A stretch of DNA of 64,000 bases from positions 253,984 to 317,983 of the IMG/VR virus record IMGVR_UViG_3300027793_000052, one strand, 5' to 3'. Positions 1,671-63,777 of this stretch are shown here, piece after piece. The stretch's first letter is position 1; every line of letters starts with the position of its first letter. Made by a program: the position numbers and the translations under genes. The notes under the pieces were generated by a model, which saw only the letters and a list, made by a program, of their open reading frames with translations, ran no database searches and was not told where the DNA came from.

Positions 1671-1678
1671 TATTTATA
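1671..1678 (+). promoter_or_regulatory. TATTTATA putative late promoter (representative of a recurrent motif)
   Basis: GATATTTATA 13 nt before ATG 1692; the same core precedes many other genes (see findings). Confidence 0.6.
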
Positions 1679-1691
1679 TAAAAAAAGTGTC

Positions 1692-1883
1692 ATGTTAGTA
1701 AACAAAAACAAAAATGAAAAAAATATTCAATCTAATTTGGATAATTTTTTAAAGGGTAAAAAACAAGAAGATTGTAACACCGATGAGTGTTTAATTAACA
1801 ACCCTGAAGAAATCGTAAAGAGAGAAAATAAAAAAATCATCACAAATGATGGTAGACAACTTTTAAACGAATACACAAACTAA
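1692..1883 (+). CDS. Small hypothetical protein
   Basis: 63 aa, preceded by TATTTATA; ends DGRQLLNE. Confidence 0.6.
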   Translation: MLVNKNKNEKNIQSNLDNFLKGKKQEDCNTDECLINNPEEIVKRENKKIITNDGRQLLNEYTN

Positions 1884-1885
1884 AT

Positions 1886-2710
1886 ATGGAAAAAGATTTA
1901 TCTAAAGAATTATCGGAATCTCTAAAAAGACATAGAGAACTTCTTGGTTATGATCCAACCAAAGGTAAGTCTTCATTGGAAGAAAGTAGATATAGACATA
2001 CATATCCGGCAGTTGATGATATGACTGATTATGCCGATGAAGAGGAGACTACAGAAACAGAAGAAGAAACAACTGACACCGAAGGTGGAGAAGAGGGTGG
2101 TGATAACCCTGATTTCGATTTCGGAGGAGAAGAAGAAGGTGGTGATGAAGAAACTGCTGATACTGAAGGTGGGGAGGAAGAAGACACCGACGAATTTGGT
2201 ACGGCTGATGAATTCAGTGCTGCAGACGAGTTAGAAACTGAAGATGCAGACGAGGAAGTTGAAGAAATAGATGTAACAGATATTGTTAAACGTGCTGACG
2301 ATGCTAAAGGTTATTCTGAAAAGGCTGTTAAAGCAGCCGAAGAAGGTAAAAATATGATAACAGATTTAATGTCCAAGTTTGACGCGTTACAATCTACTTT
2401 ATCAAAGATAGATACTGTGGCTAACGAACTTAATGTTATTAAGAGAGATATTCAATCACAAAAACCTAAAGAAAAATTAGAATTACGTTCATTAGACTCA
2501 TATCCGTTCAACGTTAAATTAACTGATTATTGGAATGATGAAAAATTAAAAGATAATTATGAAATTACTTCAGGTACTCCTGACGCTGAAAGTCAAGACG
2601 GTGAGGTTAAAGTTTGGAAAGTAAAACCTGAAGATGTTAAAGATTACAACACAACAGATATTAAAAAATCTTTTGTTCCTGAATCTAAAAAGAAAAAAAG
2701 AACAATTTAA
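1886..2710 (+). CDS. Highly acidic protein, possible head scaffold/core protein
   Basis: Long E/D/G-rich tract followed by coiled coil; downstream of a late-type motif. Function is inferred. Confidence 0.5.
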   Translation: MEKDLSKELSESLKRHRELLGYDPTKGKSSLEESRYRHTYPAVDDMTDYADEEETTETEEETTDTEGGEEGGDNPDFDFGGEEEGGDEETADTEGGEEEDTDEFGTADEFSAADELETEDADEEVEEIDVTDIVKRADDAKGYSEKAVKAAEEGKNMITDLMSKFDALQSTLSKIDTVANELNVIKRDIQSQKPKEKLELRSLDSYPFNVKLTDYWNDEKLKDNYEITSGTPDAESQDGEVKVWKVKPEDVKDYNTTDIKKSFVPESKKKKRTI

Positions 2711-2721
2711 AAAGTAAATAG

Positions 2722-2747
2722 AAAAGGGGAAACTTTCCCCTTTTTTT
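2722..2747 (+). terminator. Intrinsic terminator
   Basis: GGGGAA-act-TTCCCC stem followed by T7. Confidence 0.8.
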
Positions 2748-2751
2748 CTGC

Positions 2752-2780
2752 TTTACAAAATCTTAATTATCCATTATAAT
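2752..2780 (+). promoter_or_regulatory. Sigma70-type promoter TTTACA-N17-TATAAT upstream of SSB
   Basis: TTTACA 2752-2757, 17-nt spacer, TATAAT 2775-2780. Confidence 0.7.
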
Positions 2781-2845
2781 TAACCTACGTATACATCATA
2801 TGTACTGCGTATTAAATAAATGTTAAACAATTAAAAAAAAACAAA

Positions 2846-3679
2846 ATGAGTAATGTATTAGATGCAATCATGTCACAGTATGAGAAGAATAAGAATACTG
2901 GTGGCAGTAAAAATTTCGAAGAAAAGGACTTTTCAAAGTATTTTAACCCACGTTTAGAAGATGGAGAAAAAAATGGCGAAGCAACTATTCGTTTAATGCC
3001 AACCAAAGAAGGTGCATCACCTTTTGAAGAAGGTTATTTTCACGTTATGCAAGTTAATGGACAATGGAGAAAACTTTATTGTAGAGAACATAACGACGGT
3101 GAAACTTGTCCATTGTGTGAAGTCGAAAAGGCTTTAAAAGCAACAGGTAGTGAAGAAGATAAAAAAATAGCTAAAACTTACAAAGCAGGTAAATTTTACC
3201 TTGTTCGTGTTATTGACCGTTCCAAAGAAGAAGACGGTGTTAAAATTTGGCGTTTTCGTCATAACTATAAGGGTGAAGGTGAATTAGATAAAATGATACC
3301 TTTATTCACTAAAAAAGGAAATCTTGCAGACGGTAGAGAAGGTCGTGACCTTACACTTATGTTAGGCCGTGGTGATAAAAACAACACCAAAATAATTTCA
3401 ATTATGGCCGAAGACCCATCAATGTTAACAAATGATAAAGAAAAAGCTAAATCATGGGTTAAAGATACTTTATCATGGAAAGAAATTTATAAATCTTCTC
3501 CACTTGAATATCTTGAAATTATAGCTAATGGTGAAACACCTGTTTGGGATAAAAAACTTGAAAAGTTTGTAGCTAAAGGTGAAGAAACGGTTAAGAAAGA
3601 AACTCCTACAAGTTCGGCTAAATATACAGCCCCTAGTGTTGAGGATGAGGCTGGTGATGATGATGAAATGCCATTTTAA
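2846..3679 (+). CDS. Single-stranded DNA-binding protein, T4 gp32-like
   Basis: IRLMP, FH, C...CPLC zinc motif, GRDL, acidic C-terminal tail DDDEMPF. Confidence 0.85.
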   Translation: MSNVLDAIMSQYEKNKNTGGSKNFEEKDFSKYFNPRLEDGEKNGEATIRLMPTKEGASPFEEGYFHVMQVNGQWRKLYCREHNDGETCPLCEVEKALKATGSEEDKKIAKTYKAGKFYLVRVIDRSKEEDGVKIWRFRHNYKGEGELDKMIPLFTKKGNLADGREGRDLTLMLGRGDKNNTKIISIMAEDPSMLTNDKEKAKSWVKDTLSWKEIYKSSPLEYLEIIANGETPVWDKKLEKFVAKGEETVKKETPTSSAKYTAPSVEDEAGDDDEMPF

Positions 3680-3689
3680 TTTTTAAGTT

Positions 3690-4718
3690 ATGTCAGAAAG
3701 TAAAGAAGCAACAAAAAAGTCTATTGGTAAAAAACAGTTTTCATTAGACAATTTAAAAAATAAGTTTAGTACGAAAACTAAATACAAGGAAACAGAGTAT
3801 TTTGATTGTGGTGAAGCATTTCACAAAGCATGTGGTATACCAGGGCCTGTTGTGTGTGGTATATCTATGTTTTTAGGCCACAGTAATAGTTCTAAAACCA
3901 CAGCTTTAATTAAAGCTGCCGCTGATGCACAAAAGAAGGGTCATTTACCTGTTTTCATAATAACAGAAAGAAAATGGTCTTTTGATCATGCTAAAGAGCT
4001 TGGTTTAGATTGTGAAAAAAATTCAGAAGGTGAGTGGGACGGATTCTTCTTATTCCGTGATGATTTTGATTATATCGAACAAATCACTGATTATATGAAT
4101 GATTTGTTAAATGCTCAAGAAAAAGGTGAGTTACCACATAGTTTAGCTTTCTTTTGGGACTCTGTAGGTTCGGTACCTTGTAAAATGACCTTTGAAGGTA
4201 AAGGTGGTAAAATGCATAACGCATCAACTTTAGCTGATAAAATAGGTCTAGGTATTAGTGGAAGAATATCCAAGTCAAAAAAACAGGATTACCCATATGA
4301 AAACAGTTTAATAATAGTGAACCAACCATGGGTGGATTTACCGGATAACCCATTTGGACAACCAGAAATAAAGGCTAAAGGTGGTGAGGCAATTTGGTTG
4401 GCATCTAGTTTAGTGTTTTTATTCGGTAATCAAAAGAAGTCTGGTATTTCACATATAATGGCAACCAAAGATAAAAGGAAAGTTAGTTTTGGTATACGTA
4501 CTAAAGTATCTGTGTTAAAAAACCATATAAACGGTTTAGGTTACAAAGATGGTAAAATAATAGCCGTACCACATGGTTATATTGAAGATACTACAGAAGC
4601 TGTGGATCAATATAAGAAAAACTATTCTGAATTTTGGAAAGAAAAATTGGGGGCAGTAGATTCAGACTTTTCTTTGGAAGAAGATAAAGAAGGTGATTAT
4701 CAATTATTTGAAGACTAG
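3690..4718 (+). CDS. RecA/UvsX-like recombinase
   Basis: Walker A-like GHSNSSKTT, ITE, Walker B FFWDSVGS, IVNQ, KGG, VLKNH. Confidence 0.85.
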   Translation: MSESKEATKKSIGKKQFSLDNLKNKFSTKTKYKETEYFDCGEAFHKACGIPGPVVCGISMFLGHSNSSKTTALIKAAADAQKKGHLPVFIITERKWSFDHAKELGLDCEKNSEGEWDGFFLFRDDFDYIEQITDYMNDLLNAQEKGELPHSLAFFWDSVGSVPCKMTFEGKGGKMHNASTLADKIGLGISGRISKSKKQDYPYENSLIIVNQPWVDLPDNPFGQPEIKAKGGEAIWLASSLVFLFGNQKKSGISHIMATKDKRKVSFGIRTKVSVLKNHINGLGYKDGKIIAVPHGYIEDTTEAVDQYKKNYSEFWKEKLGAVDSDFSLEEDKEGDYQLFED

Positions 4719-4759
4719 TTTTTTAGGACTTTTAGACACTGGGTGTATATTTATAATAT

Positions 4760-7272: not shown

Positions 7273-7302
7273 TCACTATTTATGAATATACAAAGTAAGA
7301 AG

Positions 7303-8691: not shown

Positions 8692-8723
8692 AAAATTACA
8701 AATTTTCTAAAAAATTATTAAAA

Positions 8724-11725: not shown

Positions 11726-11755
11726 AAAATCCCCACAATGTGGGGATTTTTTTTT
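11726..11755 (+). terminator. Intrinsic terminator after nrdJ
   Basis: ATCCCCAC-aat-GTGGGGAT stem plus long T run. Confidence 0.85.
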
Positions 11756-11775
11756 GATAAAAAATATTTATTTGT

Positions 11776-12581: not shown

Positions 12582-12638
12582 ATGCTCTAAAAATTACACT
12601 TTATATTTTATTTTTTGGTGGTAAATTTCTTAAATGGA

Positions 12639-12646
12639 TATTTATA
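12639..12646 (+). promoter_or_regulatory. TATTTATA putative late promoter of the baseplate/tail operon
   Basis: GATATTTATA after a terminator, 15 nt before the gp25-like ATG. Confidence 0.65.
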
Positions 12647-12661: not shown

Positions 12662-13048
12662 ATGGCACAAAAAAGATTTATTAACATACAGTTTCCATTT
12701 TCTGATGACCCTGAAGGCAAGTTTTTAGAAATGAATACCGAACCAAAAAGAGCTATTAAAGCGGATTTGGTTCATTTATTATTAACTAATAAAGGTGAAA
12801 GATTGTATATGCCAGATTTTGGTGCTAATTTAAGACAATACATTTTTGAACCAAATGATGAACCTAGTTACAGTGCTATTAAAAACGAAATTAATACAGC
12901 TATATCCAAGTTCATACCAAATTTAAATGTTACTGAATTAACGGTAACACCATCTGAAAATAATATTCATGCAGTTATAGTTAGACTAGATTATGTTGTA
13001 ACTACAGGTGCTTTTGAATCTAACGACTTTGTAATATTAGAAATATAA
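12662..13048 (+). CDS. Baseplate wedge protein, gp25/GPW-like
   Basis: LLLTNKGERLYMPDFGANLRQYIFEP signature. Confidence 0.9.
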   Translation: MAQKRFINIQFPFSDDPEGKFLEMNTEPKRAIKADLVHLLLTNKGERLYMPDFGANLRQYIFEPNDEPSYSAIKNEINTAISKFIPNLNVTELTVTPSENNIHAVIVRLDYVVTTGAFESNDFVILEI

Positions 13049-13049
13049 A

Positions 13050-19699: not shown

Positions 19700-19708
19700 A
19701 AAAAAAAT

Positions 19709-24552: not shown

Positions 24553-24586
24553 AAACGTAAATAAAAATAATTATATATAAAAGATA

Positions 24587-26449: not shown

Positions 26450-26456
26450 TATTGTA

Positions 26457-31141: not shown

Positions 31142-31181
31142 TAAAAAGATAATATAACGATATTTATAAAATAAAGTAAAA

Positions 31182-37659: not shown

Positions 37660-37680
37660 TTTTTGATATTTATAATTAAG

Positions 37681-38706: not shown

Positions 38707-38800
38707 TTATTGATTTTTTATCAATAATAACTAAAATAAATAAAAAGTACATAAAAATATTTTTATTGTTGTGTATTTATATCATACAAAAACAAAAGTT

Positions 38801-47244: not shown

Positions 47245-47285
47245 CACTTATCTTTGTGAAGATATTTATAATAAAAACATAACTT

Positions 47286-48825: not shown

Positions 48826-49653
48826 ATGAATAACACGACAAACATTAAAAGATTTATTGACACGTCAGAAGAAAGCATCTCTAGATACTTAAAAGACGTA
48901 AGAAAGGTTGATGTATTAACTCCTGAGGAAGAAAACAAATTAGCTTTAGAGGTACAAAATGGTAATCAAATTGCGATGGAAAAGTTAATTACGGCAAATC
49001 TTAGATTTGTCATTAGTGTGGCTAAAGAATATCAAGGGCAAGGTTTACCTTTGGTGGATTTGATATCTGAAGGTAACTTTGGTTTAATTAAGGCGGCACA
49101 AAAATTTGACCCTAGTCGTGGATTTAGATTTATATCTTATGCGGTTTGGTGGGTTAAACAATCTATCATACAATCTTTAAATGATAACGCTAGAACTGTA
49201 CGCATACCCGTTAATGTAACAAATAACGTATCTAAACTTAAAAAAGATATGGCAGCTTTTGAACAAGAACACGGTAGAAAGGCTACTGACGCTGATATGG
49301 ATTTAAGTTTGTTAAACTTACCATCTTGTACGTCACTTAATGAAACTATTAATGAAGATGGTGATGAAATGTTGGATGTTATTGCTGATAACACTTTTGA
49401 ATCACCTGACGAATCTTTTCAGAAACCATCCGATATGTTAAAAGTTGAACTAGATAAAACTTTATCGGTGTTATCACCTAGAGAAAGAGTTATTATTGAA
49501 CTTTACTTTGGTTTAAATGGTACACCTCTAACTTTAGAAGAAATAGGTGAGGATTATAATCTTACAAAAGAACGTATAAGACAGATTAAAGCAAAGGCTT
49601 TACGTAAATTAAGAGATAAAAGTCAAAATTTATTTGACTTTGTACACAAATAA
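48826..49653 (+). CDS. RNA polymerase sigma-70 factor, Bacteroidota RpoD-like
   Basis: YL...LTPEEE, ANLRFVISVAK, DLISEGN.GLIKAA.KFD...GFRFISYAVWW, TLEEIG...LTKERIRQI; no region 1.1. Confidence 0.95.
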   Translation: MNNTTNIKRFIDTSEESISRYLKDVRKVDVLTPEEENKLALEVQNGNQIAMEKLITANLRFVISVAKEYQGQGLPLVDLISEGNFGLIKAAQKFDPSRGFRFISYAVWWVKQSIIQSLNDNARTVRIPVNVTNNVSKLKKDMAAFEQEHGRKATDADMDLSLLNLPSCTSLNETINEDGDEMLDVIADNTFESPDESFQKPSDMLKVELDKTLSVLSPRERVIIELYFGLNGTPLTLEEIGEDYNLTKERIRQIKAKALRKLRDKSQNLFDFVHK

Positions 49654-49684: not shown

Positions 49685-49758
49685 ATTTAATTTATACCGA
49701 TATGTGTTATTATTAATATAATAAATAATAAGATATTTATATTAAAAATTAAAATAAC

Positions 49759-53366: not shown

Positions 53367-53367
53367 T

Positions 53368-53682
53368 ATGAGTCAACAAATTAATAGATTATTAGAAGAA
53401 ATAAAAGAAAATAATGACAAAAAAGTTATTTTATATACAATGTCACATTGTCCTGCGTGTAAAGAATTGAAAGAAAAATTAGATCACGTTGGTATCTACT
53501 ATGAAAATGTTGAAATGGAAGGTAATGACAAAGTATGGTCGGAAATTAAATCTGAAGGTGGTGCTGACTATGTACCACAAGTTAGAGTTTCAAGTAAACT
53601 TATACACGAATTTGATGAAATTAATGATTTAATCGGTATGGTAATTAGTGAAATGATTGGCCGTAAAATTATTATAAAATAA
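53368..53682 (+). CDS. Glutaredoxin-like protein
   Basis: LYTMSHCPACKELK, YVPQV. Confidence 0.85.
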   Translation: MSQQINRLLEEIKENNDKKVILYTMSHCPACKELKEKLDHVGIYYENVEMEGNDKVWSEIKSEGGADYVPQVRVSSKLIHEFDEINDLIGMVISEMIGRKIIIK

Positions 53683-53692
53683 TTTTTAAGAT

Positions 53693-53719
53693 AAAACCAC
53701 CATGTTAGGTGGTTTTTTT
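53693..53719 (+). terminator. Intrinsic terminator
   Basis: ACCACC-atgtta-GGTGGT plus T run. Confidence 0.8.
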
Positions 53720-53784
53720 ATGCTCTTTTGATATTTATAGAAAAATGTATTTGTACAAATAACAATAAATTAAAAAATTAAAAA

Positions 53785-53946
53785 ATGGCTAAAAAAGTAT
53801 TACGTTACACAGAAGAACAGTTTATAACACTTCTTGAAAACATTGTAAAAAAAGTTAAAGCTGAAGAAACTTTAAACGAATCAGTAGATCCTAACAGAAA
53901 TGCCAGAAGACAAAATTTAAACGAAAGATTTAAAAAACTAAAATAA
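53785..53946 (+). CDS. Small 53-aa protein not in the ORF track (putative head-internal protein)
   Basis: MAKKVLRYTEEQFITLLENIVKKVKAEETLNESVDPNRNARRQNLNERFKKLK*; A-rich leader; TATTTATA at 53732. Confidence 0.7.
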   Translation: MAKKVLRYTEEQFITLLENIVKKVKAEETLNESVDPNRNARRQNLNERFKKLK

Positions 53947-53950
53947 TCCA

Positions 53951-54235
53951 ATGAGTAATAATAATATAAAAAGGATTATTAAGGAGGAGTTAAACAAATC
54001 TGATGAGGCTAAAATTAAAAAAATAGCTAAGGATGAGTTTGACAAACTAATTGGTAAACATTTAAAAAGTGAAGATCTTGAAAAAAAGGTTAAAGAATTA
54101 GTTCTTAAACATATCAAGAAAGATAAACCAACACAAAAAGAAGTGGCTAATATCACCAAAGAAGTGTTAGTTAAACTATACAAAACACTTTGGACTAGGA
54201 ATAATTTTTGGAGTAACGGTTTAGAAAATATCTAA
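53951..54235 (+). CDS. Hypothetical protein (IIKEE motif)
   Basis: IKRIIKEEL, LYKTLWTR..FW. Confidence 0.6.
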   Translation: MSNNNIKRIIKEELNKSDEAKIKKIAKDEFDKLIGKHLKSEDLEKKVKELVLKHIKKDKPTQKEVANITKEVLVKLYKTLWTRNNFWSNGLENI

Positions 54236-56151
54236 TGGTACAAAAAGATCCAAACGCAAAAGAAGGAATGAGAGTTAGGGTTCTATCTATGGTAGATGAC
54301 CCTAACCCAGTACTTGCAGGTACAGAAGGCACTATTGTTTTAATAGATGATATGGGTACATTACATGTTAAATGGGATGATGGTAGAAGATTAGGTTTAA
54401 TACCTGGTATTGATAGGTATGTCTTAGAACCTGAAGAATTTTCTAATTTAATGGACGATGCTTTTAGTACAATAGATGAGGCAGATTCTGGTAAAAATGC
54501 CATAAATACATCTATAAATCAAACCCCATCAAACATTAAAAAATCTATGCCAAGTATGCCAAGTTTGTCAAAAAGTAATGTTACCAAAAATTTTAAAACA
54601 GCTAACATTAAAGATGTTAAGGTTGAGTCTAATGAAATTAAAGGTGGTAAGGCCGATAAATTAAGTATTAAAGATTTGGCTAAAAAACATAAAGTTTCTA
54701 TAGAAGATATTAAAAAAGAAATTAAGATTGGTGTAAAGATTGAGAAGGAACATGTTGGTAATGATGTTAACAAGGCTAAAGAAATAGCTATGGATCATAT
54801 ATCAGAGTTCTCAGACTATTACTCCAACAAAAGATATGGTGTGTTAGCATCGGAAAAAGGTCTTAAAAAATCTAAAAAGAAAAAGGTTAATGAAAATCAT
54901 GAACCATTGTATTTGTTAGACGCAATGACCGCTTGGATGGCGTACAGAGGTTATAAAGAATATGGGCTCAAGGGGATGATTAAAAATCTCGGAAATAACC
55001 TAAAAGAAATCATGAAAGACTTTATTGAATATTCAACAACTGTTTATGGTACACCAGTAACTAAAGATATGACAGAGTATCAATTTAAAGAGTTATTAAA
55101 AAAATTTAAATCGGATAAAACTGATTATATGACATCGACTGCTGGAGGTGTATCCACAGGGGCTTATACTGGTAATGCTTGGGGTTCAGGACCTTTAACC
55201 AAAAGTAAATCAGTTGCCAAACCTGGCCCATTAAAAGAAATGACATATACACCCGACGATGATATTAGTGATACTAGTGCTGAAGCTTGGGCTGATAAAA
55301 ATAAAGATGGATGGAAGTGGAATGATACCCCTTTATGGGAAGAAGGTGAAATTATCGATCCTTTGGCTAAGATAAAAACATCATGGGATGATGACAATTT
55401 GGACATCTCCAAAGATTGGGATAAAGTTCAAAAGAAAAAAAATCTTAAAAAAGAAGATGTATTAAAGATGGTCGGTATGAGACTTATAGAATCTAAATAT
55501 AAAATTGTTAATGATAAGAGTTTAGATAGTATTAAAGATAATTTTAAACCACCAAGAACAGAAGATGAGGAAGAACCAATAGAAGAGACAACAACATTTG
55601 GTTCTGTTTGGGGACCTAATGGACCTCCTGTTGGGCCGGCTTTCGCGGCAAAACAAGGTCAATGGAGAGCAGGAAAAAACCCAATATGGAAAGGTGGTAA
55701 AATAGTTCAAAAAGTTAATAATTCTGGTGTTTTAAACCCTATTACTGAAAATAAAATAGAAGTAGGTGATATGGTAAAAATTAAAAAAGAATACGGTGGT
55801 GGTACGGGTGAAGTTGTTGACATTAAGAAATCATTTGTTGTTGTAAAAACAAAAGACGGTAATAAGTCATACCACATGTCTGATTTAATTACAGAAGCTA
55901 ATAAGGTTAAATACAATCCTGATGGTCAAATAGTACAGATAAAAAAGAAGTGTACCAAATACCCTTATTGTAGTCAAGGGGCTATAGACAAACCTTTAAA
56001 AATATCAAGTTCAGTTAGTCAACCAGGGACTTATGTAGAAACAGAGTTATCTAACGAGACAATAAAGAACATACATGAAATATCCAAACAAATTGGTAGA
56101 CCTTTTATAGAGGTTTATAATTTGGTTAAAGAAAAATTGGGTGATTATTAA
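54235..56151 (+). CDS. Multidomain protein: DUF4314-like + DUF5661-like + KOW/SH3-like modules
   Basis: GTEGTI..IDDMGTLHVKWDDGR.LGL; KIGVKIEKEH...AKEIAMDH..E..DYY; VGDMVKI...TGEVV. Confidence 0.65.
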   Translation: MVQKDPNAKEGMRVRVLSMVDDPNPVLAGTEGTIVLIDDMGTLHVKWDDGRRLGLIPGIDRYVLEPEEFSNLMDDAFSTIDEADSGKNAINTSINQTPSNIKKSMPSMPSLSKSNVTKNFKTANIKDVKVESNEIKGGKADKLSIKDLAKKHKVSIEDIKKEIKIGVKIEKEHVGNDVNKAKEIAMDHISEFSDYYSNKRYGVLASEKGLKKSKKKKVNENHEPLYLLDAMTAWMAYRGYKEYGLKGMIKNLGNNLKEIMKDFIEYSTTVYGTPVTKDMTEYQFKELLKKFKSDKTDYMTSTAGGVSTGAYTGNAWGSGPLTKSKSVAKPGPLKEMTYTPDDDISDTSAEAWADKNKDGWKWNDTPLWEEGEIIDPLAKIKTSWDDDNLDISKDWDKVQKKKNLKKEDVLKMVGMRLIESKYKIVNDKSLDSIKDNFKPPRTEDEEEPIEETTTFGSVWGPNGPPVGPAFAAKQGQWRAGKNPIWKGGKIVQKVNNSGVLNPITENKIEVGDMVKIKKEYGGGTGEVVDIKKSFVVVKTKDGNKSYHMSDLITEANKVKYNPDGQIVQIKKKCTKYPYCSQGAIDKPLKISSSVSQPGTYVETELSNETIKNIHEISKQIGRPFIEVYNLVKEKLGDY

Positions 56152-56184
56152 CATAAATAGCATATTTATAATAAAAACAAAAAC

Positions 56185-57141
56185 ATGTCAAATATTAATA
56201 AACTAATAAAGAAAGGTCTTAACAAATTATTGGAGACAAAAGGTTTTGAAGAAATGGAATTTGCTTTTGGTACTAAAAAAAATTCCGAATTATCACAAGA
56301 GGAAAAAAACCAATTTGGTCCCATGGGTAATTTAAAAGACCAAAAAGGTGGTAATATCACAACTCAAGAAGTTAATGGTTTAAAAGTGGTAAACAAAACC
56401 AATAAAACAAATGATAGTGACGCTCAAGCATATTATAAAGAAGTGGCTAAAAAAGTTAAAGACTATCAAACACCAAACGATAAAGAAAAGTTTGATGCAC
56501 CTAAAGTAGATACTAATACAAATGTTGAAGATGAGAGACTTGAGATAACTGGTTATGATGTTGGTGTTTCTGGTTTAGAAGTTACAGCCGATTTAGCTGC
56601 TGAAAAAGGTGGTTCAGAAGGGGTTAAAGCCAAATATAAAGAAAGGATTAAATCTGATGATCCTACGGCAGAGAAAATGATGAAGAACGCTAAGAAAACA
56701 AATGATTTAAAATATAAAAAAGAAGCAAATAACACAAGACCTGTAAAGGCACAAAAATCACCACAACCAATGGGAGAAAATGTGGAATATAGAGGTGTTG
56801 ATGCTAAGAACATCTTTAAAGCTAACGGTAAGTTAATATCAGAAGAACAAGTTTTAAAATTAGCAAATAAAGTACCATCTAGGATTAAAATAGATGAAAC
56901 AACTTTTGCTATTACTGACGGTGAAAACACGTATAGACTTATATGGGAAGGTGATGATAAAAACGGTGAGGCAATCATTACAAACCATAAAAACAGTACA
57001 TTAGTAAAAGAAGATATTGAAAAAATGAAGAAACTTTGGGGTTTTAAATCTAATAATTCTATATCCACTAAGAAAAACATTACCGAATCTGGTGAAGACG
57101 CATTTAAAAGAATGTTTAAAAAAATAAAAGAAGATAAATAA
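56185..57141 (+). CDS. Hypothetical late protein
   Basis: Follows TATTTATA; charged; L/IxE motifs. Confidence 0.6.
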   Translation: MSNINKLIKKGLNKLLETKGFEEMEFAFGTKKNSELSQEEKNQFGPMGNLKDQKGGNITTQEVNGLKVVNKTNKTNDSDAQAYYKEVAKKVKDYQTPNDKEKFDAPKVDTNTNVEDERLEITGYDVGVSGLEVTADLAAEKGGSEGVKAKYKERIKSDDPTAEKMMKNAKKTNDLKYKKEANNTRPVKAQKSPQPMGENVEYRGVDAKNIFKANGKLISEEQVLKLANKVPSRIKIDETTFAITDGENTYRLIWEGDDKNGEAIITNHKNSTLVKEDIEKMKKLWGFKSNNSISTKKNITESGEDAFKRMFKKIKEDK

Positions 57142-57149
57142 TAAAAATT

Positions 57150-57174
57150 AACCCCTCTTCGTGAGGGGTTTTTT
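57150..57174 (+). terminator. Intrinsic terminator
   Basis: CCCCTC-ttcgt-GAGGGG plus T6. Confidence 0.85.
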
Positions 57175-57225
57175 ATGCTTAACAATATTTATATATAAAA
57201 TAATAGATTTTAAAAACAAAATTAT

Positions 57226-57768
57226 ATGAAACCAGGTTATATTTCAGAATACGTAACACTCAAAGAAGTTACTTATAGTGATACAGCAGCAAGAAAAGGT
57301 ATTGATAACACACCTTCACCAGAACAAATGAAACTAATTGAAGCCGCGGCCGTTAATGTTTTTGATAAATTAAGAGAGTGGGTTGGTGGCCCTATCAAAA
57401 TCAACAGTGTGTTCCGTGGTGATAAATTAAATAAAGCTATAGGGGGTAGTAAAACATCACAGCATTGTGTTGGATTAGATCCTAAAACTTCTAGTTATGG
57501 GGCGGCTTTCGATGTGGACGATGATTACTTCCAAAAAAAATTTACAACTAAAAACAACAATGACATGTTTCATTACATCAAGGATAAATTAGATTTCGAT
57601 CAATTAATATGGGAATTCGGCAGTAAATCAAATCCTGATTGGGTTCATTTTAGTTATAGACCTGATGGTAAAAATAGAAAACAAGTTCTCATAGCTGTTA
57701 AGAAAGAAGGTAAAACAGTTTACTTACCATATAAAGGAAATGAAAATTTAACCGGCTCAATTAAATGA
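57226..57768 (+). CDS. Peptidase M15A-family Zn peptidase (endolysin candidate)
   Basis: SxxA.RKGIDN.P, INSVFR, NKAIGGSKTSQH, AFD, DFDQLIWEF, WVHFSY. Confidence 0.88.
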   Translation: MKPGYISEYVTLKEVTYSDTAARKGIDNTPSPEQMKLIEAAAVNVFDKLREWVGGPIKINSVFRGDKLNKAIGGSKTSQHCVGLDPKTSSYGAAFDVDDDYFQKKFTTKNNNDMFHYIKDKLDFDQLIWEFGSKSNPDWVHFSYRPDGKNRKQVLIAVKKEGKTVYLPYKGNENLTGSIK

Positions 57769-57823
57769 TAAATCAATTTTAAAATCTATTTAATTTAAAA
57801 ACTATTGGTTTATATTATAAATT

Positions 57824-58288
57824 ATGAAAGGGAAAACACAGGCCATAGATTTTATAGAATACATTTCAAAACCTATGAATAAAGAAGATATTTCTTTAAT
57901 GTATAAGATTAATAATATAACCCCTGAGAGAACAGGTTTATATTTAGATTTTACACAAACAATATATCAAACCATAATTTCAACCTATTTGGGCGATGAA
58001 GTGATGGACAATAAATCAATTAAAGAACATTTTGATTGGTGTTGGAACAAAACCGTAAATTCGTTTAAAAAAGAAGAAATATTTTTCGATAGTAATGAAT
58101 TATACAATTATTTTTATACCTTATTTTTAGAATCTTTTTATTCAGAAAATGATAAATCAGATTTAAATGTAAATAAATTGTTAGAGTTTTGGTTAGATAT
58201 ATTTAACTTTTCAAAAACCAAAACACGTTCAGAGCTAGAGGCTTTCATAGATTTATATAAACTTTTTGATAAATCTTTACTTAATTAG
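57824..58288 (+). CDS. Hypothetical protein
   Basis: TYLGD, HFDWCWNK. Confidence 0.6.
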   Translation: MKGKTQAIDFIEYISKPMNKEDISLMYKINNITPERTGLYLDFTQTIYQTIISTYLGDEVMDNKSIKEHFDWCWNKTVNSFKKEEIFFDSNELYNYFYTLFLESFYSENDKSDLNVNKLLEFWLDIFNFSKTKTRSELEAFIDLYKLFDKSLLN

Positions 58289-58338
58289 TATTTAGTTTTT
58301 AATTAAAACACTTAAAATTTAATAAAAAATAATGTTTC

Positions 58339-58566
58339 ATGGATAAAAGAGTTACTGATGTTATATCCAATAAATACATCACCAAAAAAATAGAGATTGA
58401 ACTTGAGTTGGAAAAATTGATTAACAACTCTTACAATATTTCCATAGAAGAATCCGTGGAAAGAATAATAAATAACGTATCAAAGTTAAGGTCTACTGTA
58501 AATGACATCCAAATGTGGGAAACTATAGTACAACAATTGTTACCACAAAATCCTGAAAAGGAATAA
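58339..58566 (+). CDS. Hypothetical protein
   Basis: 75 aa, helical. Confidence 0.55.
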   Translation: MDKRVTDVISNKYITKKIEIELELEKLINNSYNISIEESVERIINNVSKLRSTVNDIQMWETIVQQLLPQNPEKE

Positions 58567-58592
58567 TAATAAATAAAATAAATAAAAAACAA

Positions 58593-58781
58593 ATGAAAAC
58601 AACTAGTTTAGAAACAATGAAAGCTTTGGTTTCAGAATTTGAAACTGATTACACAAAATTTGCTGAAAAAGGAAACAAAGCTGCTGGCACACGTGCTAGA
58701 AAAGCTCTACAAGAAATCAGAAATCTTGCCAAAGATATTCGTTCTGAAATCAGTGGGGCCAAAAAAGAAAAAGCTGCTTAA
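58593..58781 (+). CDS. Histone H1-like protein, Hc1 family
   Basis: KFAEKGNKAAGTRARKALQEI...KDIR. Confidence 0.85.
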   Translation: MKTTSLETMKALVSEFETDYTKFAEKGNKAAGTRARKALQEIRNLAKDIRSEISGAKKEKAA

Positions 58782-58782
58782 T

Positions 58783-58989
58783 ATGATAACTTCTCTCATA
58801 AATAAAGTTTTATTTATTCTTTTTTTTCTTTCACTATTAAATGTCATTAGACATGGGTGGAAGATTTTTATGCAACTGAGAGATACGGATTTACCTAATA
58901 AATATGAGCTCACCAAAAGTGAGCTTATATTTTTAGGATTATCTGTTGCTTATTTATTAACAACAATTTTTACAACAATAGAAATATGA
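58783..58989 (+). CDS. Small membrane protein
   Basis: MITSLINK start; two hydrophobic helices (ORF track start 58639 overlaps Hc1). Confidence 0.6.
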   Translation: MITSLINKVLFILFFLSLLNVIRHGWKIFMQLRDTDLPNKYELTKSELIFLGLSVAYLLTTIFTTIEI

Positions 58990-59201: not shown

Positions 59202-59202
59202 C

Positions 59203-59956: not shown

Positions 59957-59967
59957 GAGGGTTTTTT
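59945..59967 (+). terminator. Terminator between convergent genes
   Basis: AACCCTC-aataa-GAGGGTT plus T run. Confidence 0.7.
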
Positions 59968-60508
59968 ATTTCTCCACAAATTCATCCCATTGGTCCGATT
60001 TAATTTCATTAAGGTAAAAACTATCAATGCGACCCGTGTCTTTAAGTTTTTTACCCCAATCTTTAAAACTTGAAAAATGTTCTAAACGATCATCCCACAA
60101 TTCAACCTCCCGAATATTAGGGAATTTATCCAATAAATCATTTAAATGGTTTATTTTTTCGTTTAAAGTATTACCACCACGATTAAATAAATAATAATCA
60201 AAACTAAACCCTAAATCATTTAATATTGTTTTAACCAAGTTAGATATTTTATTAACCCTACCAGTTAACATAACAACTAAATTAGATGGATCAGATTTAA
60301 CGGTGTCATAATCTTTTTTAACCTCAGGTATTGGGTTCATATCCCAAACCTTTCTATCTAAACTTTCTTCACGTCCCCACCACCCAATGTATGGCCAAGG
60401 TTTACCATAATGTTTAGACCATTTTTCTTTATTTTCTGGTGACGCAATTGCTGTATTTACAAGTGTTCCATCGAAATCAAACACGCAAAGCTTTCTTTTT
60501 TCTATCAT
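59966..60508 (-). CDS. HAD-superfamily phosphatase (Swiss-army-knife RNA-repair-like HAD)
   Basis: VFDFDGTL, WW, MLTGR, K, WDDR..H. Confidence 0.8.
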   Translation of the reverse strand: MIEKRKLCVFDFDGTLVNTAIASPENKEKWSKHYGKPWPYIGWWGREESLDRKVWDMNPIPEVKKDYDTVKSDPSNLVVMLTGRVNKISNLVKTILNDLGFSFDYYLFNRGGNTLNEKINHLNDLLDKFPNIREVELWDDRLEHFSSFKDWGKKLKDTGRIDSFYLNEIKSDQWDEFVEK

Positions 60509-60556
60509 TTCATTAATATTTAATACAAATATAAATATAGTTAAAAAATTGTTAAT

Positions 60557-60913: not shown

Positions 60914-60945
60914 TGTAGATAAATTTTTTGTATATTTATCTTTGT

Positions 60946-61374
60946 ATGGAAAAAAGAAAAAAATCAGTGGGTATATTAATATTAGCCAAAAAAACTAATA
61001 GATTTTTACTATTACATCGTGTTAACAAACCTGTAGCTTGGTCTACATTAGCTGGTAAAATGGAAGAAGGTGAAACACCAAAAGAAACCATTAAGAGGGA
61101 AATCTTAGAGGAGATTGGTATAAACTCCAATATTTTAAATGGTATAGAAGAAGTTGGTATGGTTGGTTCACACCATGTTATGGTTGGTATAACAGATAAA
61201 GAATTTGAAATACCAAACTTAAAATTAGACGAAAATGATGATTATGGTTGGTTTACTGAGAAAACATTACCTTCACCAATGCACCCTAAATGGGAAGATA
61301 GTTTTAATTTAATAAAACCATTAATTAATCTAAGAGAAGTTTTTGTTAAGAATTTTAAAAATTTAATAAAATGA
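60946..61374 (+). CDS. Nudix hydrolase
   Basis: Nudix box GKMEEGETPKETIKREILEEIG. Confidence 0.9.
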   Translation: MEKRKKSVGILILAKKTNRFLLLHRVNKPVAWSTLAGKMEEGETPKETIKREILEEIGINSNILNGIEEVGMVGSHHVMVGITDKEFEIPNLKLDENDDYGWFTEKTLPSPMHPKWEDSFNLIKPLINLREVFVKNFKNLIK

Positions 61375-61559
61375 GTAGAGATTTGGTTAAAAATGAAGAA
61401 CGTAAAATGTTACAAGACATTGTCGCCACTCAAATAAAAAAAGAAAATTTTATTAGAGAGATTGTTGGTGGGTTAGGTGATGAAATAATAGCCGAACCAA
61501 GTAAACCACAAAAAAAATTAAGTTTTTGGGGTAAATTAAGAAGAATGTTTTTAAAATGA
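61371..61559 (+). CDS. Small hypothetical protein
   Basis: 62 aa, amphipathic C-terminus FWGKLRRMF. Confidence 0.55.
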   Translation: MSRDLVKNEERKMLQDIVATQIKKENFIREIVGGLGDEIIAEPSKPQKKLSFWGKLRRMFLK

Positions 61560-61807
61560 AAAACGCAGTACTATTTAAAACCAACTCCTTAAAAGAGTTT
61601 GTTGATTTTGCCACATCTTTAAAAGAAATGGAAGAAGTTAAAGCCGGTAAATTTCCTTTACCTTTCGGTATTACTTACAAATTAGATAGTATTAATCATG
61701 ATAATTTACAAAAAGAAATTTTAAAACAAAAAAAGTTACCCACAGATGTACTATATGATGAATTTGAGTTAGAATTGTACGGTATAACTTTTAAATTTAT
61801 AAAATAA
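61556..61807 (+). CDS. Small hypothetical protein
   Basis: 83 aa, coupled to neighbours. Confidence 0.55.
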   Translation: MKNAVLFKTNSLKEFVDFATSLKEMEEVKAGKFPLPFGITYKLDSINHDNLQKEILKQKKLPTDVLYDEFELELYGITFKFIK

Positions 61808-62409
61808 TGGGTAACTTAATTAATTTACCACCACATCTAGATGATACAAAAATTTTTATAGGCCTCGATGAGGCTGGTAGAGGTTCTTTAGCAGGTCCAG
61901 TTGTTGTAGCAGGAGTCATATTACCAAAAGACTTTCAATCAGATATTGTCAAAGACTCTAAAAAATTATCAGAAAAAAAAAGAAAAGAGGCATTCGAGTT
62001 GATTAAACGAGAGGCAATATCTTGGTCAGTATCTTTTATAGGTCCTGAAGATATCGACGATTTAAACATACTTCAGGCAACAATGAAGGGTATGCATCAG
62101 TGTCTCACAGAACTAGAAGGTGAATATAACCATATATTAGTTGACGGTAATTATTTTAAACCATTTAAAGAGGTGGAACATGATTGTATCATCAAAGGTG
62201 ATAACACCTATTACTCAATAGCGGCAGCTTCAATTTTAGCTAAAGTATCTAGGGATGAGTATATGAAAAAACTACACCTTAGTCACCCACAATATGATTG
62301 GTGTGGTAATAAAGGTTACGGTTCATCGGCCCATATTCAAAAAATAAAAGATATTGGATATACTGAACATCATCGTAAATCATTTTTAAAAAATATCATT
62401 CAGACCTAA
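61807..62409 (+). CDS. rnhB: Ribonuclease HII
   Basis: GLDEAGRGSLAGPV, DSKKL, VDGN, KGD...SIAAASILAKV.RD, NKGYG, HRKSF. Confidence 0.95.
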   Translation: MGNLINLPPHLDDTKIFIGLDEAGRGSLAGPVVVAGVILPKDFQSDIVKDSKKLSEKKRKEAFELIKREAISWSVSFIGPEDIDDLNILQATMKGMHQCLTELEGEYNHILVDGNYFKPFKEVEHDCIIKGDNTYYSIAAASILAKVSRDEYMKKLHLSHPQYDWCGNKGYGSSAHIQKIKDIGYTEHHRKSFLKNIIQT

Positions 62410-62433
62410 TTTTATTTTCATTATTGTTAGGTT

Positions 62434-62913
62434 ATGGAAATACCTAAACATTTACTACAGTCTTTTATTGAAAGTGTTAAAAATATAATACTTTCATATA
62501 ATAGAAAATACGTTAAAGAAAAATTAACAAAAAAACCTAAAGAAGAAATAGAACAAATTGTTAGATCTTTATATAGTGAAGAAAAAAAGATTGAGTGGTT
62601 AAATAATAGTGTTGATGTTAAAAATAAATTAAATTTAACTGATAAACCTTGGGTCCATCATTATAGTTTAAACATGTCTTGGATTTTGTTTTACAAATCC
62701 TTGTATGAGATGGTTTTTAATAAAAACATAAATCAACCATCAAAGGAGTTAGAAAATTTTATACAAGAAGGTCATGAAACATACCACAAAGTATACAAAC
62801 TATATGTTATACTTAACACAGTTGACGGTATTATGGAGTCTGACGATACAATCTATTTGGTTAAAACAGATATATCTTTTATTAGACCAAACATCAAAAA
62901 GATATTTATATAA
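62434..62913 (+). CDS. Hypothetical protein
   Basis: 159-aa ORF. Confidence 0.5.
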   Translation: MEIPKHLLQSFIESVKNIILSYNRKYVKEKLTKKPKEEIEQIVRSLYSEEKKIEWLNNSVDVKNKLNLTDKPWVHHYSLNMSWILFYKSLYEMVFNKNINQPSKELENFIQEGHETYHKVYKLYVILNTVDGIMESDDTIYLVKTDISFIRPNIKKIFI

Positions 62914-62914
62914 T

Positions 62915-63118
62915 ATGGATAATTTAATTACTTATCTTAACTTGATGAAATCTAAATTGGAACCTTTTGAGAATACGGTAAACACTGATATCGTTATGGA
63001 AGAATTAACCAACATAGCAACTAATAATTGGGTTAAAAATGGTGTACCTAATTTATCAAAAGAACAATTTGATATTGTGTTAAGACGTTCTCTAGCTAGA
63101 ACTATTATCTTGAATTAG
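62915..63118 (+). CDS. Small hypothetical protein
   Basis: MDNLITY start after TATTTATA at 62903; NGVPNLSKEQF. Confidence 0.55.
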   Translation: MDNLITYLNLMKSKLEPFENTVNTDIVMEELTNIATNNWVKNGVPNLSKEQFDIVLRRSLARTIILN

Positions 63119-63746
63119 AACGGTACAATCTATTATAACCAATACCAGTTCTATCGTGGATTTTTTTATACCACACTTTTCTGTTTTCTTTTGGTACTGA
63201 ACCGAAAAATATAATATCACCTATTTTGTTATCAAAACAATAAGTTCTAATTTTATTATATAATCTTATAGTTTCATCAATATTTTTACATGTAACCATA
63301 TATAAATCTAAACCTTCAATTACAATTTTATTGTTTAACATTAATACCTGTTTAGGTGCTTTTTTTTGTTTGTTTGAAATAACAACATGCTCAATAATTT
63401 CTTTTGCTGTTAATTTACGATTAGCATCACTAACATTAAAACTTTCTTCAATATGGAAATATGAAGTATCCATTATAACCCAATCCTCATCATCAACAGT
63501 TTCTTCAACAAATTTACCCAATTCGTTTTTAATAACTCTATTAACATCACCTTCTTCTCTTTTCTTTAATAAAAGTATTTCATAAACAACATCAACTAAT
63601 TTTTTATTTTTATAAACCTTTATTTTAGGAAAAATTACCTCTTGAGATTTAAGTTTTTCAAACCTATAATTAGCATCGTGTTCCCTACTATATGAATGGA
63701 GAACTTTGATTTTTTTCTTATTTTCAACTAGAACAATTTGATACAT
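63105..63746 (-). CDS. Hypothetical protein
   Basis: 213 aa on minus strand, preceded by TATTTATA on its own strand (63753-63760). Confidence 0.65.
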
Positions 63747-63777
63747 ATATTATATAAATATATTCCACACAATTAAA

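What the first reader, a model, noticed from the sequence alone, without database searches (positions are those of the whole stretch)
1671..63760. Recurrent TATTTATA upstream motif: the reverse complement of the T4 late promoter
Exact TATTTATA (often GATATTTATA) lies 4-45 nt before start codons at 1671, 4748, 12639, 31161, 37667, 38774, 47263, 49734, 53732, 56163, 57186 and 62903. On the minus strand it occurs at 60530-60537 and 63753-63760, in front of two minus-strand genes. One-mismatch variants are at 7277, 11765, 48432 and 60933. It follows gene orientation and often comes directly after a terminator. The T4 gp55 late promoter is TATAAATA; here the sense strand carries its reverse complement, which implies a different late sigma specificity. 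Caveat: the genome is AT-rich.
Basis: partly seen in the sequence, partly recalled or inferred. Interest (0 to 1): 0.6.

Follow-up and report, generated by a model that had tools for sequence, protein, structure and literature searches.

The report
Phage late-type promoter motif ATATTTATA
The recurrent TATTTATA word is a real, direction-specific promoter element of a 318-kb freshwater jumbo phage and its relatives, RNA contigs begin a few bases after it, and it most likely answers to a very divergent phage sigma factor related to T4 gp55, not to the host's.

Summary
The motif's total count in the window is not above chance, but its placement is. The core ATATTTAT (usually G/A-ATATTTAT-A/T) lies in sense orientation within 60 nt of starts 13 times in the window (1.6 expected) and 78 times in the 318-kb phage genome (10 expected). 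It is the top upstream 8-mer there and in 54 related viral contigs.

RNA contigs from four freshwater metatranscriptomes stop at the terminator and restart 2-38 nt after the motif at both sites laid. Two of those contigs carry 19-21 non-templated A at their 5' end.

The motif has no -35 partner. It sits either 4-8 nt from the ATG (leaderless) or at least 13 nt away, never 9-12.

The window encodes an RpoD-like sigma (48826-49653), but a Flavobacterium phage and a Microcystis phage that lack it have the same motif. All of these phages share a divergent sigma-like protein outside the window whose best match is T4 gp55.

TATTTATA equals the T4 late box TATAAATA at 6 of 8 positions in the same orientation. 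I read it as a new variant of the T4-type late promoter. Sigma assignment and timing are inferred.

The parts
1670..1678 (+). Motif GATATTTATA, 14 nt before ATG 1692 (63-aa ORF). It heads the run 1886-4718 that holds SSB-like and UvsX-like genes.
   Evidence: PHROGs
4747..4755 (+). Motif, 5 nt before ATG 4760 (278-aa endonuclease-like gene). Leaderless-type spacing.
11764..11771 (+). Exact core after the hairpin and T-run terminator at 11730-11755, 4 nt before ATG 11776 (homing endonuclease).
12638..12646 (+). Motif, 16 nt before ATG 12662. It heads the baseplate/tail gene run 12662-31141.
31160..31168 (+). Motif, 14 nt before GTG 31182 (682-aa gene, no family match).
37666..37674 (+). Motif, 7 nt before ATG 37681 (68-aa ORF, followed by an exonuclease gene at 37880-38629). 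Leaderless-type spacing.
38774..38781 (+). TATTTATA preceded by G instead of A (core variant GTATTTAT), 19 nt before ATG 38801. Probable weaker member.
47262..47270 (+). Motif, 16 nt before ATG 47286. A host-type TATCTTTG box lies 4 nt upstream of it.
48826..49653 (+). Phage RpoD-like sigma factor (275 aa; regions 1.2, 2, 4). Preceded by host-type TAnnTTTG boxes before 47926 and 48438, not by the motif. Probably not the reader of the motif.
   Evidence: absent from the motif-bearing phages immuto and Mel-JY01
49733..49741 (+). Motif, 18 nt before ATG 49759, just after the sigma gene. A core lies within 200 nt after the sigma gene in 19 of 54 relatives.
53694..53720 (+). Hairpin and T-run terminator. 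RNA contigs of three runs end at 53657-53663, just upstream of it.
53731..53739 (+). Motif with RNA support. Contigs of four runs restart at 53741, 53749, 53772 and 53772. The one from 53741 has 21 extra A in front of the A-run 53741-53745.
56162..56170 (+). Motif (C before the core), 15 nt before ATG 56185. RNA contigs read through it, so no start is resolved here.
57150..57174 (+). Hairpin and T-run terminator. RNA contigs of four runs end at 57126-57151, one of them followed by sequencing adapter.
57185..57193 (+). Motif with RNA support. Contigs restart at 57197, 57202, 57210 and 57231. The one from 57197 has 19 extra A in front of the A-run 57197-57200. It serves the Peptidase_M15 (endolysin-like) gene 57226-57768.
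60932..60939 (+). Exact core, 6 nt before ATG 60946 (142 aa). Leaderless-type spacing.
62902..62910 (+). Motif, 5 nt before ATG 62915 (67-aa ORF), inside the end of ORF 62434-62913. Probable member.
60530..60538 (-). Motif on the minus strand, 22 nt before ATG 60508 of the minus-strand gene 59966-60508 (polynucleotide-kinase-like).
63753..63761 (-). Motif on the minus strand, 7 nt before ATG 63746 of gene 63105-63746. A second core lies at 63782-63789.

Best explanation
ATATTTAT(A) is the single -10-type recognition element of a phage-specific promoter class, with no -35 partner. It is used by the host RNA polymerase core when that core carries a phage-encoded, very divergent sigma related to T4 gp55. 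This sigma is a 257-aa protein at genome 156254-157027, minus strand, outside the window, called g238 here.

Transcription starts about 6 nt after the last T of the core, usually on an A.
- Where the ATG sits 4-8 nt from the core, the mRNA is leaderless.
- Elsewhere the leader is only about 8-14 nt and the start lies in a run of A. There the polymerase can slip and add non-templated A, which gives oligo(A) 5' heads.

The class serves structural and lysis genes and also recombination and nuclease genes.

Shown: the enrichment, orientation, anatomy and conservation of the motif, the RNA contig ends, and the co-occurrence with g238.
For: - Placement and strand bias far above shuffles. It is the top upstream 8-mer in this genome. 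In 54 non-redundant related contigs it is enriched 9.4-fold, 164 sense against 33 antisense, and this holds at all three levels of sigma divergence. The same method returns TATAAATA for T4.
- RNA: in four metatranscriptome runs the contigs' own ends fall at the terminator and 2-38 nt after the motif, at both terminator-motif junctions laid. These two junctions are the only gaps shared by the two best-covered runs. Mean contig depth is higher downstream of site 53731 in all four runs. A 21-A head stands at 53741 and a 19-A head at 57197, in + sense. The A-headed forms are absent from the DNA collections.
- Anatomy: no -35 consensus, only a weak T patch 13-17 nt upstream. Spacing to the ATG is bimodal, 4-8 nt (34 sites) or at least 13 nt (56 sites), with none at 9-12. 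An AAA run lies at the inferred start in 45 of 56 long-spaced sites and 5 of 34 short-spaced ones. The modal position of the ATG's A in the short class and the overlap of the two A-runs both place the start about 6 nt after the core.
- Reader: the genome has no multisubunit RNA polymerase genes. g238 shows a weak Sigma70_r2 match (E 0.016). It is the best hit of T4 gp55 in this proteome (E 0.014). The best PDB hit of its family profile is SigA region 2 (E 0.087). hhalign aligns the same region to gp55. All 50 top structural matches of its model are sigma factors over the sigma-2 domain, Z 6-7.3.
- Co-variation: g238 homologues are present in 5 of 5 large relatives, in Flavobacterium phage immuto (E 1.6e-27) and in Microcystis phage Mel-JY01 (E 1e-20). 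Both of these have the motif (17 sense/1 antisense and 18/2) and lack the RpoD-like sigma. RM378 and T4 lack g238 and lack the motif. In Mel-JY01 the motif sits further upstream, with Shine-Dalgarno-like leaders.
- Genes served include terminase, portal, sheath, baseplate and endolysin.
Against: - Every single line that calls g238 a sigma or gp55 relative is weak: E about 0.01-0.09, hhalign probability 3.8%, Z under 8, no PHROG hit, and no hit of its profile in T4 itself.
- Co-occurrence across about eight genomes plus contigs does not prove recognition.
- The RNA evidence consists of assembled contigs, not reads. The tool warns that holes prove nothing and that contigs cannot show a start. 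Only two sites are informative, and the third site laid (56162) shows read-through. Each oligo(A) head rests on one contig.
- Timing is unknown, and the motif also precedes DNA-metabolism genes.
- Gene starts come from a crude caller.
Confidence: 0.6

Rival explanations
1. The motif is read by the RpoD-like sigma encoded in the window (48826-49653), a phage copy of a primary sigma with changed -10 specificity.
For: - It is a full sigma with regions 1.2, 2 and 4 (phrog_351).
- Residues that read -12 in E. coli sigma70 are changed (T440 to I, R441 to Q), and so are those that read the extended -10 (H455 and E458 to N).
- The gene follows host-type promoters, as an early gene would.
- All 54 relatives that carry it have the motif.
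Against: - Flavobacterium phage immuto has no Sigma70_r2 match anywhere and no tblastn hit, yet the motif is 12-fold enriched there, including before terminase and portal. The same holds for Mel-JY01.
- Its region 4.2 is nearly canonical, which suggests -35-dependent promoters, yet these sites have no -35 element.
Confidence: 0.12
2. It is a variant of the host's own -7 promoter element (Bacteroidota TAnnTTTG), read by a host sigma, possibly after phage modification of the polymerase.
For: - The core shares A..TTT with TAHHTTTG (PMC6847099).
- The one-mismatch form ATATTTGT is also enriched upstream, 19 of 101.
- The genome lacks Shine-Dalgarno sites and carries clear TTTG-N19-TAnnTTTG promoters.
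Against: - The near-invariant host positions T-12 and G-5 are replaced by G/A and A, and there is no -33 element.
- Host-type and motif sites form separate sets on different genes.
- The same motif is enriched in a phage of a cyanobacterium, and it is absent from RM378, a phage of Rhodothermus.
Confidence: 0.1
3. It acts on RNA, as a translation or processing signal next to the start codon, not as a promoter.
For: - It lies very close to start codons (mode 5 and 14-16 nt).
- The genome has no Shine-Dalgarno signal that would otherwise place ribosomes.
Against: - At both resolved sites the RNA contigs of all four runs begin after the motif, so it is not in the RNA.
- The 5' oligo(A) heads do not fit cleavage.
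- In Mel-JY01 the motif sits 30-40 nt upstream, with Shine-Dalgarno-like sequences between it and the ATG.
Confidence: 0.03
4. It is a chance word of AT-rich intergenic DNA.
For: The total count in the window is within chance, and the genome is 30% G+C.
Against: - 78 observed against 10 +/- 3 in composition-matched shuffles of the same upstream stretches.
- 3:1 to 18:1 strand bias.
- Conservation across genomes.
Confidence: 0.01

Closest known systems
T4-type late promoter (TATAAATA) read by gp55, with gp33 and the gp45 clamp
   Same: - An 8-9 bp A/T-only -10-type box with no -35 element.
- About 6 nt between the box and the start.
- Found before head, tail and lysis genes of a myovirus with T4-like portal, sheath and baseplate genes.
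- A small phage sigma as the likely reader.
- 6 of 8 bases identical in the same orientation.
   Different: - Positions 4-5 are TT, not AA. T4's own word is not enriched here, and this word is not enriched in T4.
- The candidate sigma is 257 aa against 185 aa for gp55 and is only marginally similar.
- Co-activators were not looked for.
- Many sites give leaderless or very short-leader mRNAs.
Bacteroidota housekeeping promoter, -33 TTTG / -7 TAnnTTTG (TAHHTTTG), read by sigma-A (PMC6847099)
   Same: Shares the A-TA-TTT centre. It occurs in phages of hosts without Shine-Dalgarno sites, and this class is also present in the genome as a separate set of promoters.
   Different: - The first and last invariant host bases (T-12, G-5) are G/A and A here.
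- Two extra conserved bases follow.
- There is no -33 element.
- Leaders are 0-14 nt, against a host mean of 33 nt with 87% over 10 nt.
Reiterative transcription initiation at homopolymeric start sites (PMC8812562; PMC12709180) and poxvirus late TAAAT promoters with 5' poly(A) heads (the poxvirus part is from my own knowledge)
   Same: The start lies in a run of A, and the RNA carries more A than the DNA at its 5' end (19-21 extra A at two sites).
   Different: It is seen here in only two assembled contigs. The length distribution, the frequency and any role in translation are unknown. I found no report of it for a bacteriophage promoter class in the searchable library.
Phage-encoded sigma70-family sigmas of primary type (annotated rpoD in Microcystis phage MaAM05)
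   Same: The window's 275-aa sigma has regions 1.2, 2 and 4 and is about 40% identical to bacterial SigA/RpoD.
   Different: It has 315 relatives in viral contigs, but it does not track the motif. Its own promoters are not identified; host-type TAnnTTTG sites are candidates.

Membership tests
T4-type late promoter | Consensus TATAAATA on the non-template strand | tested here: not met
   The consensus here is (G/A)ATATTTAT(A/T). TATAAATA in sense orientation upstream occurs 1 time in the window against 2.3 expected. It shares 6 of 8 bases with TATTTATA in the same orientation.
T4-type late promoter | No -35 element; the box alone defines the promoter | tested here: met
   The position matrix of 81 sites shows no information near -35, only a weak T patch 13-17 nt upstream of the core.
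T4-type late promoter | Start about 6 nt downstream of the box | tested here: inconclusive
   RNA contigs begin 3 and 5 nt after the core, inside A-runs that reach 7-8 nt after it. The ATG of leaderless-type sites peaks at 6 nt. This is consistent, but contigs cannot fix a start.
T4-type late promoter | Serves late (virion, lysis) genes | tested here: met
   It precedes terminase, portal, sheath, baseplate and endolysin genes. It also precedes SSB/UvsX, helicase and nuclease genes. Timing itself was not measured.
T4-type late promoter | Read by a gp55 homologue | tested here: inconclusive
   g238 is the best gp55 hit in the proteome (E 0.014). hhalign aligns the same region (E 0.011, probability 3.8%). 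The model shows a sigma-2 fold (Z 6-7.3). There is no PHROG hit.
T4-type late promoter | Needs gp33 and the sliding clamp | not tested
   No search for gp33 or gp45 homologues was made. Dependence needs biochemistry.
Bacteroidota sigma-A promoter | -7 element TAHHTTTG with near-invariant T-12 and G-5 | tested here: not met
   The base before the core is T in 14% of sites (G 43%, A 32%). The position that aligns with G-5 is A in all sites by definition of the core. The consensus is from PMC6847099.
Bacteroidota sigma-A promoter | -33 TTTG about 19 nt upstream | tested here: not met
   It is absent at motif sites and present at the separate host-type set (15 sense TTTG-N17-21-TAnnTTTG).
Sigma70-family protein (for g238) | Sigma-2 domain | tested here: inconclusive
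   Pfam Sigma70_r2 scores E 0.016, below the cut-off. The family profile's best PDB hit is SigA region 2 (E 0.087). The AF2 model has pLDDT 72.7. All 50 top VIA-align rows are sigma factors over residues 15-140.
Reiterative transcription initiation | Homopolymer at the start site and extra non-templated copies of that base at the RNA 5' end | tested here: inconclusive
   An AAA run lies at the inferred start in 45 of 56 long-spaced sites. There are 21 and 19 extra A at two sites, one contig each, in two runs. The A-headed forms are absent from DNA collections.

The most novel reading that the evidence does not exclude
This clade of T4-like phages of hosts without Shine-Dalgarno sites makes its late-type mRNAs in two unusual forms by design. 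About a third are truly leaderless. The rest start in an A-run, where the polymerase slips and builds a 5' oligo(A)/poly(A) head of 20 nt or more. That head would serve as an unstructured, A-rich translation leader. This would be a bacterial-virus counterpart of the poxvirus late poly(A) leader, specified by one 9-bp box and a gp55-like sigma.
Probability: 0.3. Interest if true: 0.85.

Novelty: new variant of a known kind. Interest (0 to 1): 0.62.

Why it matters
- It gives a testable promoter code for a large, mostly uncultured clade of freshwater jumbo phages: 315 viral contigs carry the RpoD-like sigma and 125 carry the gp55-like protein. The code can be used to call operons and gene starts in these genomes.
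- It points to an unannotated 'hypothetical protein' (KNV73_gp118 in the cultured Flavobacterium phage immuto) as the late sigma. This opens a natural experiment on how two central bases of the T4 late box co-vary with gp55-type sigmas.
- Hosts of two phyla share the box, so the phage, not the host, sets it.
- The leaderless spacing and the oligo(A) heads bear on how translation starts without Shine-Dalgarno pairing.

Tried and rejected
- A whole-window count of TATTTATA is not informative.
- A PWM grown from exact seeds only returned the exact core, so I used one-mismatch counts instead.
- Near-identity search of the phage collection found no match.
- Multisubunit RNA polymerase genes (PF00562, PF00623) are absent, so a phiKZ-type polymerase is rejected.
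- g238 had no match in PHROGs, and against the PDB by single sequence it matched only cyclin noise.
- The g238 family profile found nothing in T4 or RM378.
- I looked for A-headed transcript forms or transcript-derived contigs in the JGI metagenome contigs and IMG/VR. There were none; only a 318-kb DNA contig matched.
- The look-up of encoding contigs returned only long DNA contigs.
- A search for a third promoter word among 82 genes without either class gave nothing clear.
- The motif is not conserved at a fixed place next to the sigma gene in most relatives: 19 of 54 have a core within 200 nt downstream.
- The reversed-pattern control of the genome search is useless here, because the reversed word contains the motif.
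- Literature searches for the word, for phage reiterative transcription and for immuto transcription found no prior description.
- The costly protein searches (search for homologous proteins, the search of protein representatives) were not used.

Full report
WHAT THE WINDOW IS

The window is bases 253984-317983 of a 317,983-bp viral record (CheckV 96% complete, 30% G+C). The phage has T4-like virion genes:
- portal and terminase
- sheath
- baseplate wedge proteins

Its nearest cultured relatives by portal protein, at about 39% identity, are Microcystis phage Mel-JY01 and the Flavobacterium phages vB_FspM_immuto.

G is depleted before start codons and there is no Shine-Dalgarno signal. A set of small genes carries TTTG-N17-21-TAnnTTTG promoters. 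This is the Bacteroidota housekeeping type (PMC6847099), so the host is most likely a member of the Bacteroidota. Near-identical DNA stands in freshwater, sediment and 'fungus' metagenome runs of 17 studies.

THE OBSERVATION

All listed sites exist. The total number of TATTTATA in the window (30) is within chance (22.6 +/- 4.1), so the claim rests on placement.

I called ORFs with a simple longest-ORF rule. I then compared the 60 nt before each start with dinucleotide-preserving shuffles of those same stretches:

| Word, sense orientation | Observed | Shuffles |
|---|---|---|
| ATATTTAT, window | 13 | 1.63 +/- 1.30 |
| ATATTTAT, genome | 78 | 10.05 +/- 3.02 |
| TATAAATA (reverse complement), window | 1 | 2.3 |
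| TATAAATA (reverse complement), genome | 21 | 11.6 |

Most of the 21 genome copies of TATAAATA come from divergent gene pairs.

ATATTTAT is the commonest upstream 8-mer of the genome. 75 of its 155 copies lie in 3.1% of the search space. After correcting over-long ORF calls, 90 of 155 are upstream in sense orientation.

As a positive control, the same script returns TATAAATA as the top word for T4, 21 sense against 7 antisense.

- 11765 and 60933 are exact cores
- 7277 only overlaps the DnaB start codon
- 48432 is unclear

ANATOMY

The consensus is (G 43% / A 32%)-ATATTTAT-(A 65% / T 30%). Upstream there is no -35-like information, only a T-rich patch 13-17 nt before the core (55-66% T). Downstream is A-rich: 62% and 75% A at the 4th and 6th base after the core.

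A T-run precedes 43 of 90 sites. A terminator-like hairpin precedes only 8.

The distance from core to start codon is bimodal:
- 4-8 nt at most of 34 short-spaced sites (mode 5)
- none at 9-12 nt
- 13 nt or more at 56 sites (mode 14-17)

An AAA run lies 2-9 nt after the core in 45 of the 56 long-spaced sites but in only 5 of the 34 short-spaced ones.

RNA

Six metatranscriptome runs hold the stretch. I laid four of them on 52801-58800, which is 6,000 letters. These are assembled contigs, and the tool warns that holes prove nothing and that contigs cannot show a start. I therefore rely on the records' own first and last letters.

| Junction | Terminator | Motif | Contigs end at | Contigs begin at |
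|---|---|---|---|---|
| First | 53694-53720 | 53731-53739 | 53657, 53661, 53663 | 53741, 53749, 53772, 53772 |
| Second | 57150-57174 | 57185-57193 | 57126, 57131 (then adapter), 57133, 57151 | 57197, 57202, 57210, 57231 |

- These are the only two gaps shared by the two best-covered runs.
- In all four runs the contig downstream of 53731 has a higher mean depth than the one upstream. This is suggestive only.
- The motif itself is in none of these RNA contigs.
- The contig that begins at 53741 carries 21 A that the genome does not have. The genome reads G at 53740, then AAAAA.
- The contig that begins at 57197 carries 19 extra A before a genomic AAAA.
- Both heads are in + sense, which is the 5' end of the mRNA. 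A 3' tail on an antisense RNA would read as T.
- Searches for these A-headed forms in DNA collections found none.
- The third motif in the stretch (56162) is read through and shows no start.

The overlap of the two A-runs (5-7 nt after the core) and the modal position of the A of the ATG at leaderless-type sites (6 nt) agree on a start about 6 nt after the core. That gives leaders of 0-3 nt or about 8-14 nt. In Flavobacterium johnsoniae the mean leader is 33 nt and 87% of leaders exceed 10 nt.

WHO READS IT

The genome has no multisubunit RNA polymerase genes. It has two sigma candidates.

(a) The RpoD-like sigma in the window, 48826-49653.
- It is a 275-aa RpoD-like sigma with regions 1.2, 2 and 4.
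- It is about 40% identical to bacterial SigA.
- In E. coli numbering it has T440 to I, R441 to Q, and H455 and E458 to N. Its region 4.2 is nearly canonical.
- It follows host-type boxes.
- It has 315 relatives in viral contigs.

(b) g238, at genome 156254-157027 on the minus strand, 257 aa. Several weak lines point the same way:
- Sigma70_r2 at E 0.016
- best hit of T4 gp55 in this proteome, E 0.014
- its 18-member family profile hits SigA region 2 first in the PDB, E 0.087
- hhalign aligns residues 72-143 to gp55 residues 51-123, E 0.011 but probability only 3.8%
- the AlphaFold model has pLDDT 72.7
- Foldseek's best rows are mostly sigma factors, E 0.08-0.5
- all 50 best VIA-align rows are sigma factors over the sigma-2 domain, Z 6-7.3

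None of these is strong alone.

The comparison of genomes decides between the two:

| Phage or set | Motif upstream (sense/antisense) | g238 homologue | RpoD-like sigma |
|---|---|---|---|
| 54 non-redundant contigs with the RpoD-like sigma (1 Mb) | ATATTTAT most enriched, 9.4x, 164/33, same in three bands of sigma identity | 5 of 5 large relatives checked | yes |
| Flavobacterium phage immuto (cultured, 160 kb) | 17/1, 12x, before terminase, portal and other late genes | yes, E 1.6e-27, annotated hypothetical | no: no Sigma70_r2 match, no tblastn hit |
| Microcystis phage Mel-JY01 (cyanobacterial host) | 18/2 | yes, E 1e-20 | no tblastn hit |
| Rhodothermus phage RM378 | none; its own word TTATTTAA(A) is enriched instead | no | no tblastn hit |
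| T4 | none; TATAAATA instead | no | no tblastn hit |

- In immuto the g238 homologue lies in a gene run headed by an early-type promoter, and the next gene carries the motif.
- In Mel-JY01 the motif sits 30-40 nt upstream, with Shine-Dalgarno-like leaders between it and the ATG.
- So the motif tracks g238, not the RpoD-like sigma and not the host phylum.

GENES SERVED
- terminase, portal, sheath
- baseplate run
- endolysin-like peptidase
- helicase and other genes
- SSB/UvsX run, nucleases and homing endonucleases

'Late' is therefore plausible for many of these genes but is not measured.

COMPARISON WITH WHAT IS KNOWN

But TATTTATA and TATAAATA also agree at 6 of 8 positions in the same orientation, differing only at positions 4 and 5.

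The element shares these features with the T4 late box:
- no -35 element
- similar spacing to the start
- the same gene classes
- a gp55-like candidate sigma

This is best filed as a new variant of the T4-type late promoter, not as a member, because the consensus itself differs. It also resembles the host -7 box (A..TTT) but lacks T-12, G-5 and the -33 element.

The oligo(A) heads fit reiterative initiation at homopolymeric start sites (PMC8812562). From my own knowledge, they also recall poxvirus late mRNAs.

I found no paper that describes this motif or such heads for a phage.

VERDICT

| Statement | Probability |
|---|---|
| Real promoter element | about 0.9 |
| Read by the g238 (gp55-like) sigma | about 0.6 |
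| Systematic leaderless / oligo(A)-headed design | about 0.3 |

Noticed in passing
window 48826-49653 (+): A complete RpoD-like sigma gene (regions 1.2, 2, 4) with 315 relatives in viral contigs. The residues that read -12 and the extended -10 in E. coli sigma70 are changed; region 4.2 is nearly canonical. Its own promoters are unknown, and it does not track the motif.
   Followed up: partly
genome 23-106 kb; in the window before ORFs 47926 and 48438: A separate class of host-type Bacteroidota promoters (TTTG, 17-21 nt, TAnnTTTG, mostly TATATTTG) lies in front of small genes and of the gene run that holds the sigma gene. The genome has no Shine-Dalgarno sites.
   Followed up: partly
genome 65-146 kb and 235 kb (outside the window), e.g. 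starts at 65063, 75850, 78712, 80025, 81175, 145827, 235363: A family of paralogous genes whose products begin M-R/K-N/D-L-I-K/R-K. Each has the motif 5-7 nt before its ATG (leaderless-type spacing).
   Followed up: no
genome 2.4-21.7 kb (L011, L012): At least 22 tRNA genes in clusters, including three tRNA-Asn in a row. One motif site (genome 15464) directly follows a tRNA-like sequence.
   Followed up: partly
genome 126549-129707 (L018:7549-10707): The large terminase ORF is 1052 aa. Its terminase matches are split between the N-terminal 200 and the C-terminal 250 residues, which suggests an intein or another insert.
   Followed up: no
Flavobacterium phage immuto, NC_055915.1, 60-76 kb: About 18 small genes carry a nearly identical early-type promoter and leader: GTTG, about 19 nt, TATATTTAG, then GTATCAATAATTAAAAC. 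This is distinct from the TATTTAT sites before the virion genes.
   Followed up: partly
Rhodothermus phage RM378, NC_004735.1: Its most common upstream 8-mer is TTATTTAA (26 sense, 9 antisense), one base away from TATTTATA. It may be that phage's own late box. No g238 homologue was found there.
   Followed up: no
window 55356-55533: One RNA run (X15) differs from the window at seven places within 180 nt of the 638-aa gene. This looks like strain variation.
   Followed up: no
genome 153-183 kb, minus strand (outside the window): A run of about 38 genes, many of 210-270 aa, with neither promoter class in front of them. It includes a glycosyltransferase gene and the g238 sigma-like gene. How this run is transcribed is unexplained.
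   Followed up: partly
sequencing runs X3-X6, X8, X10, X14: Several runs labelled 'fungus metagenome' hold the stretch at 92-100% of its words, alongside freshwater and sediment runs. The reason is unknown.
   Followed up: no
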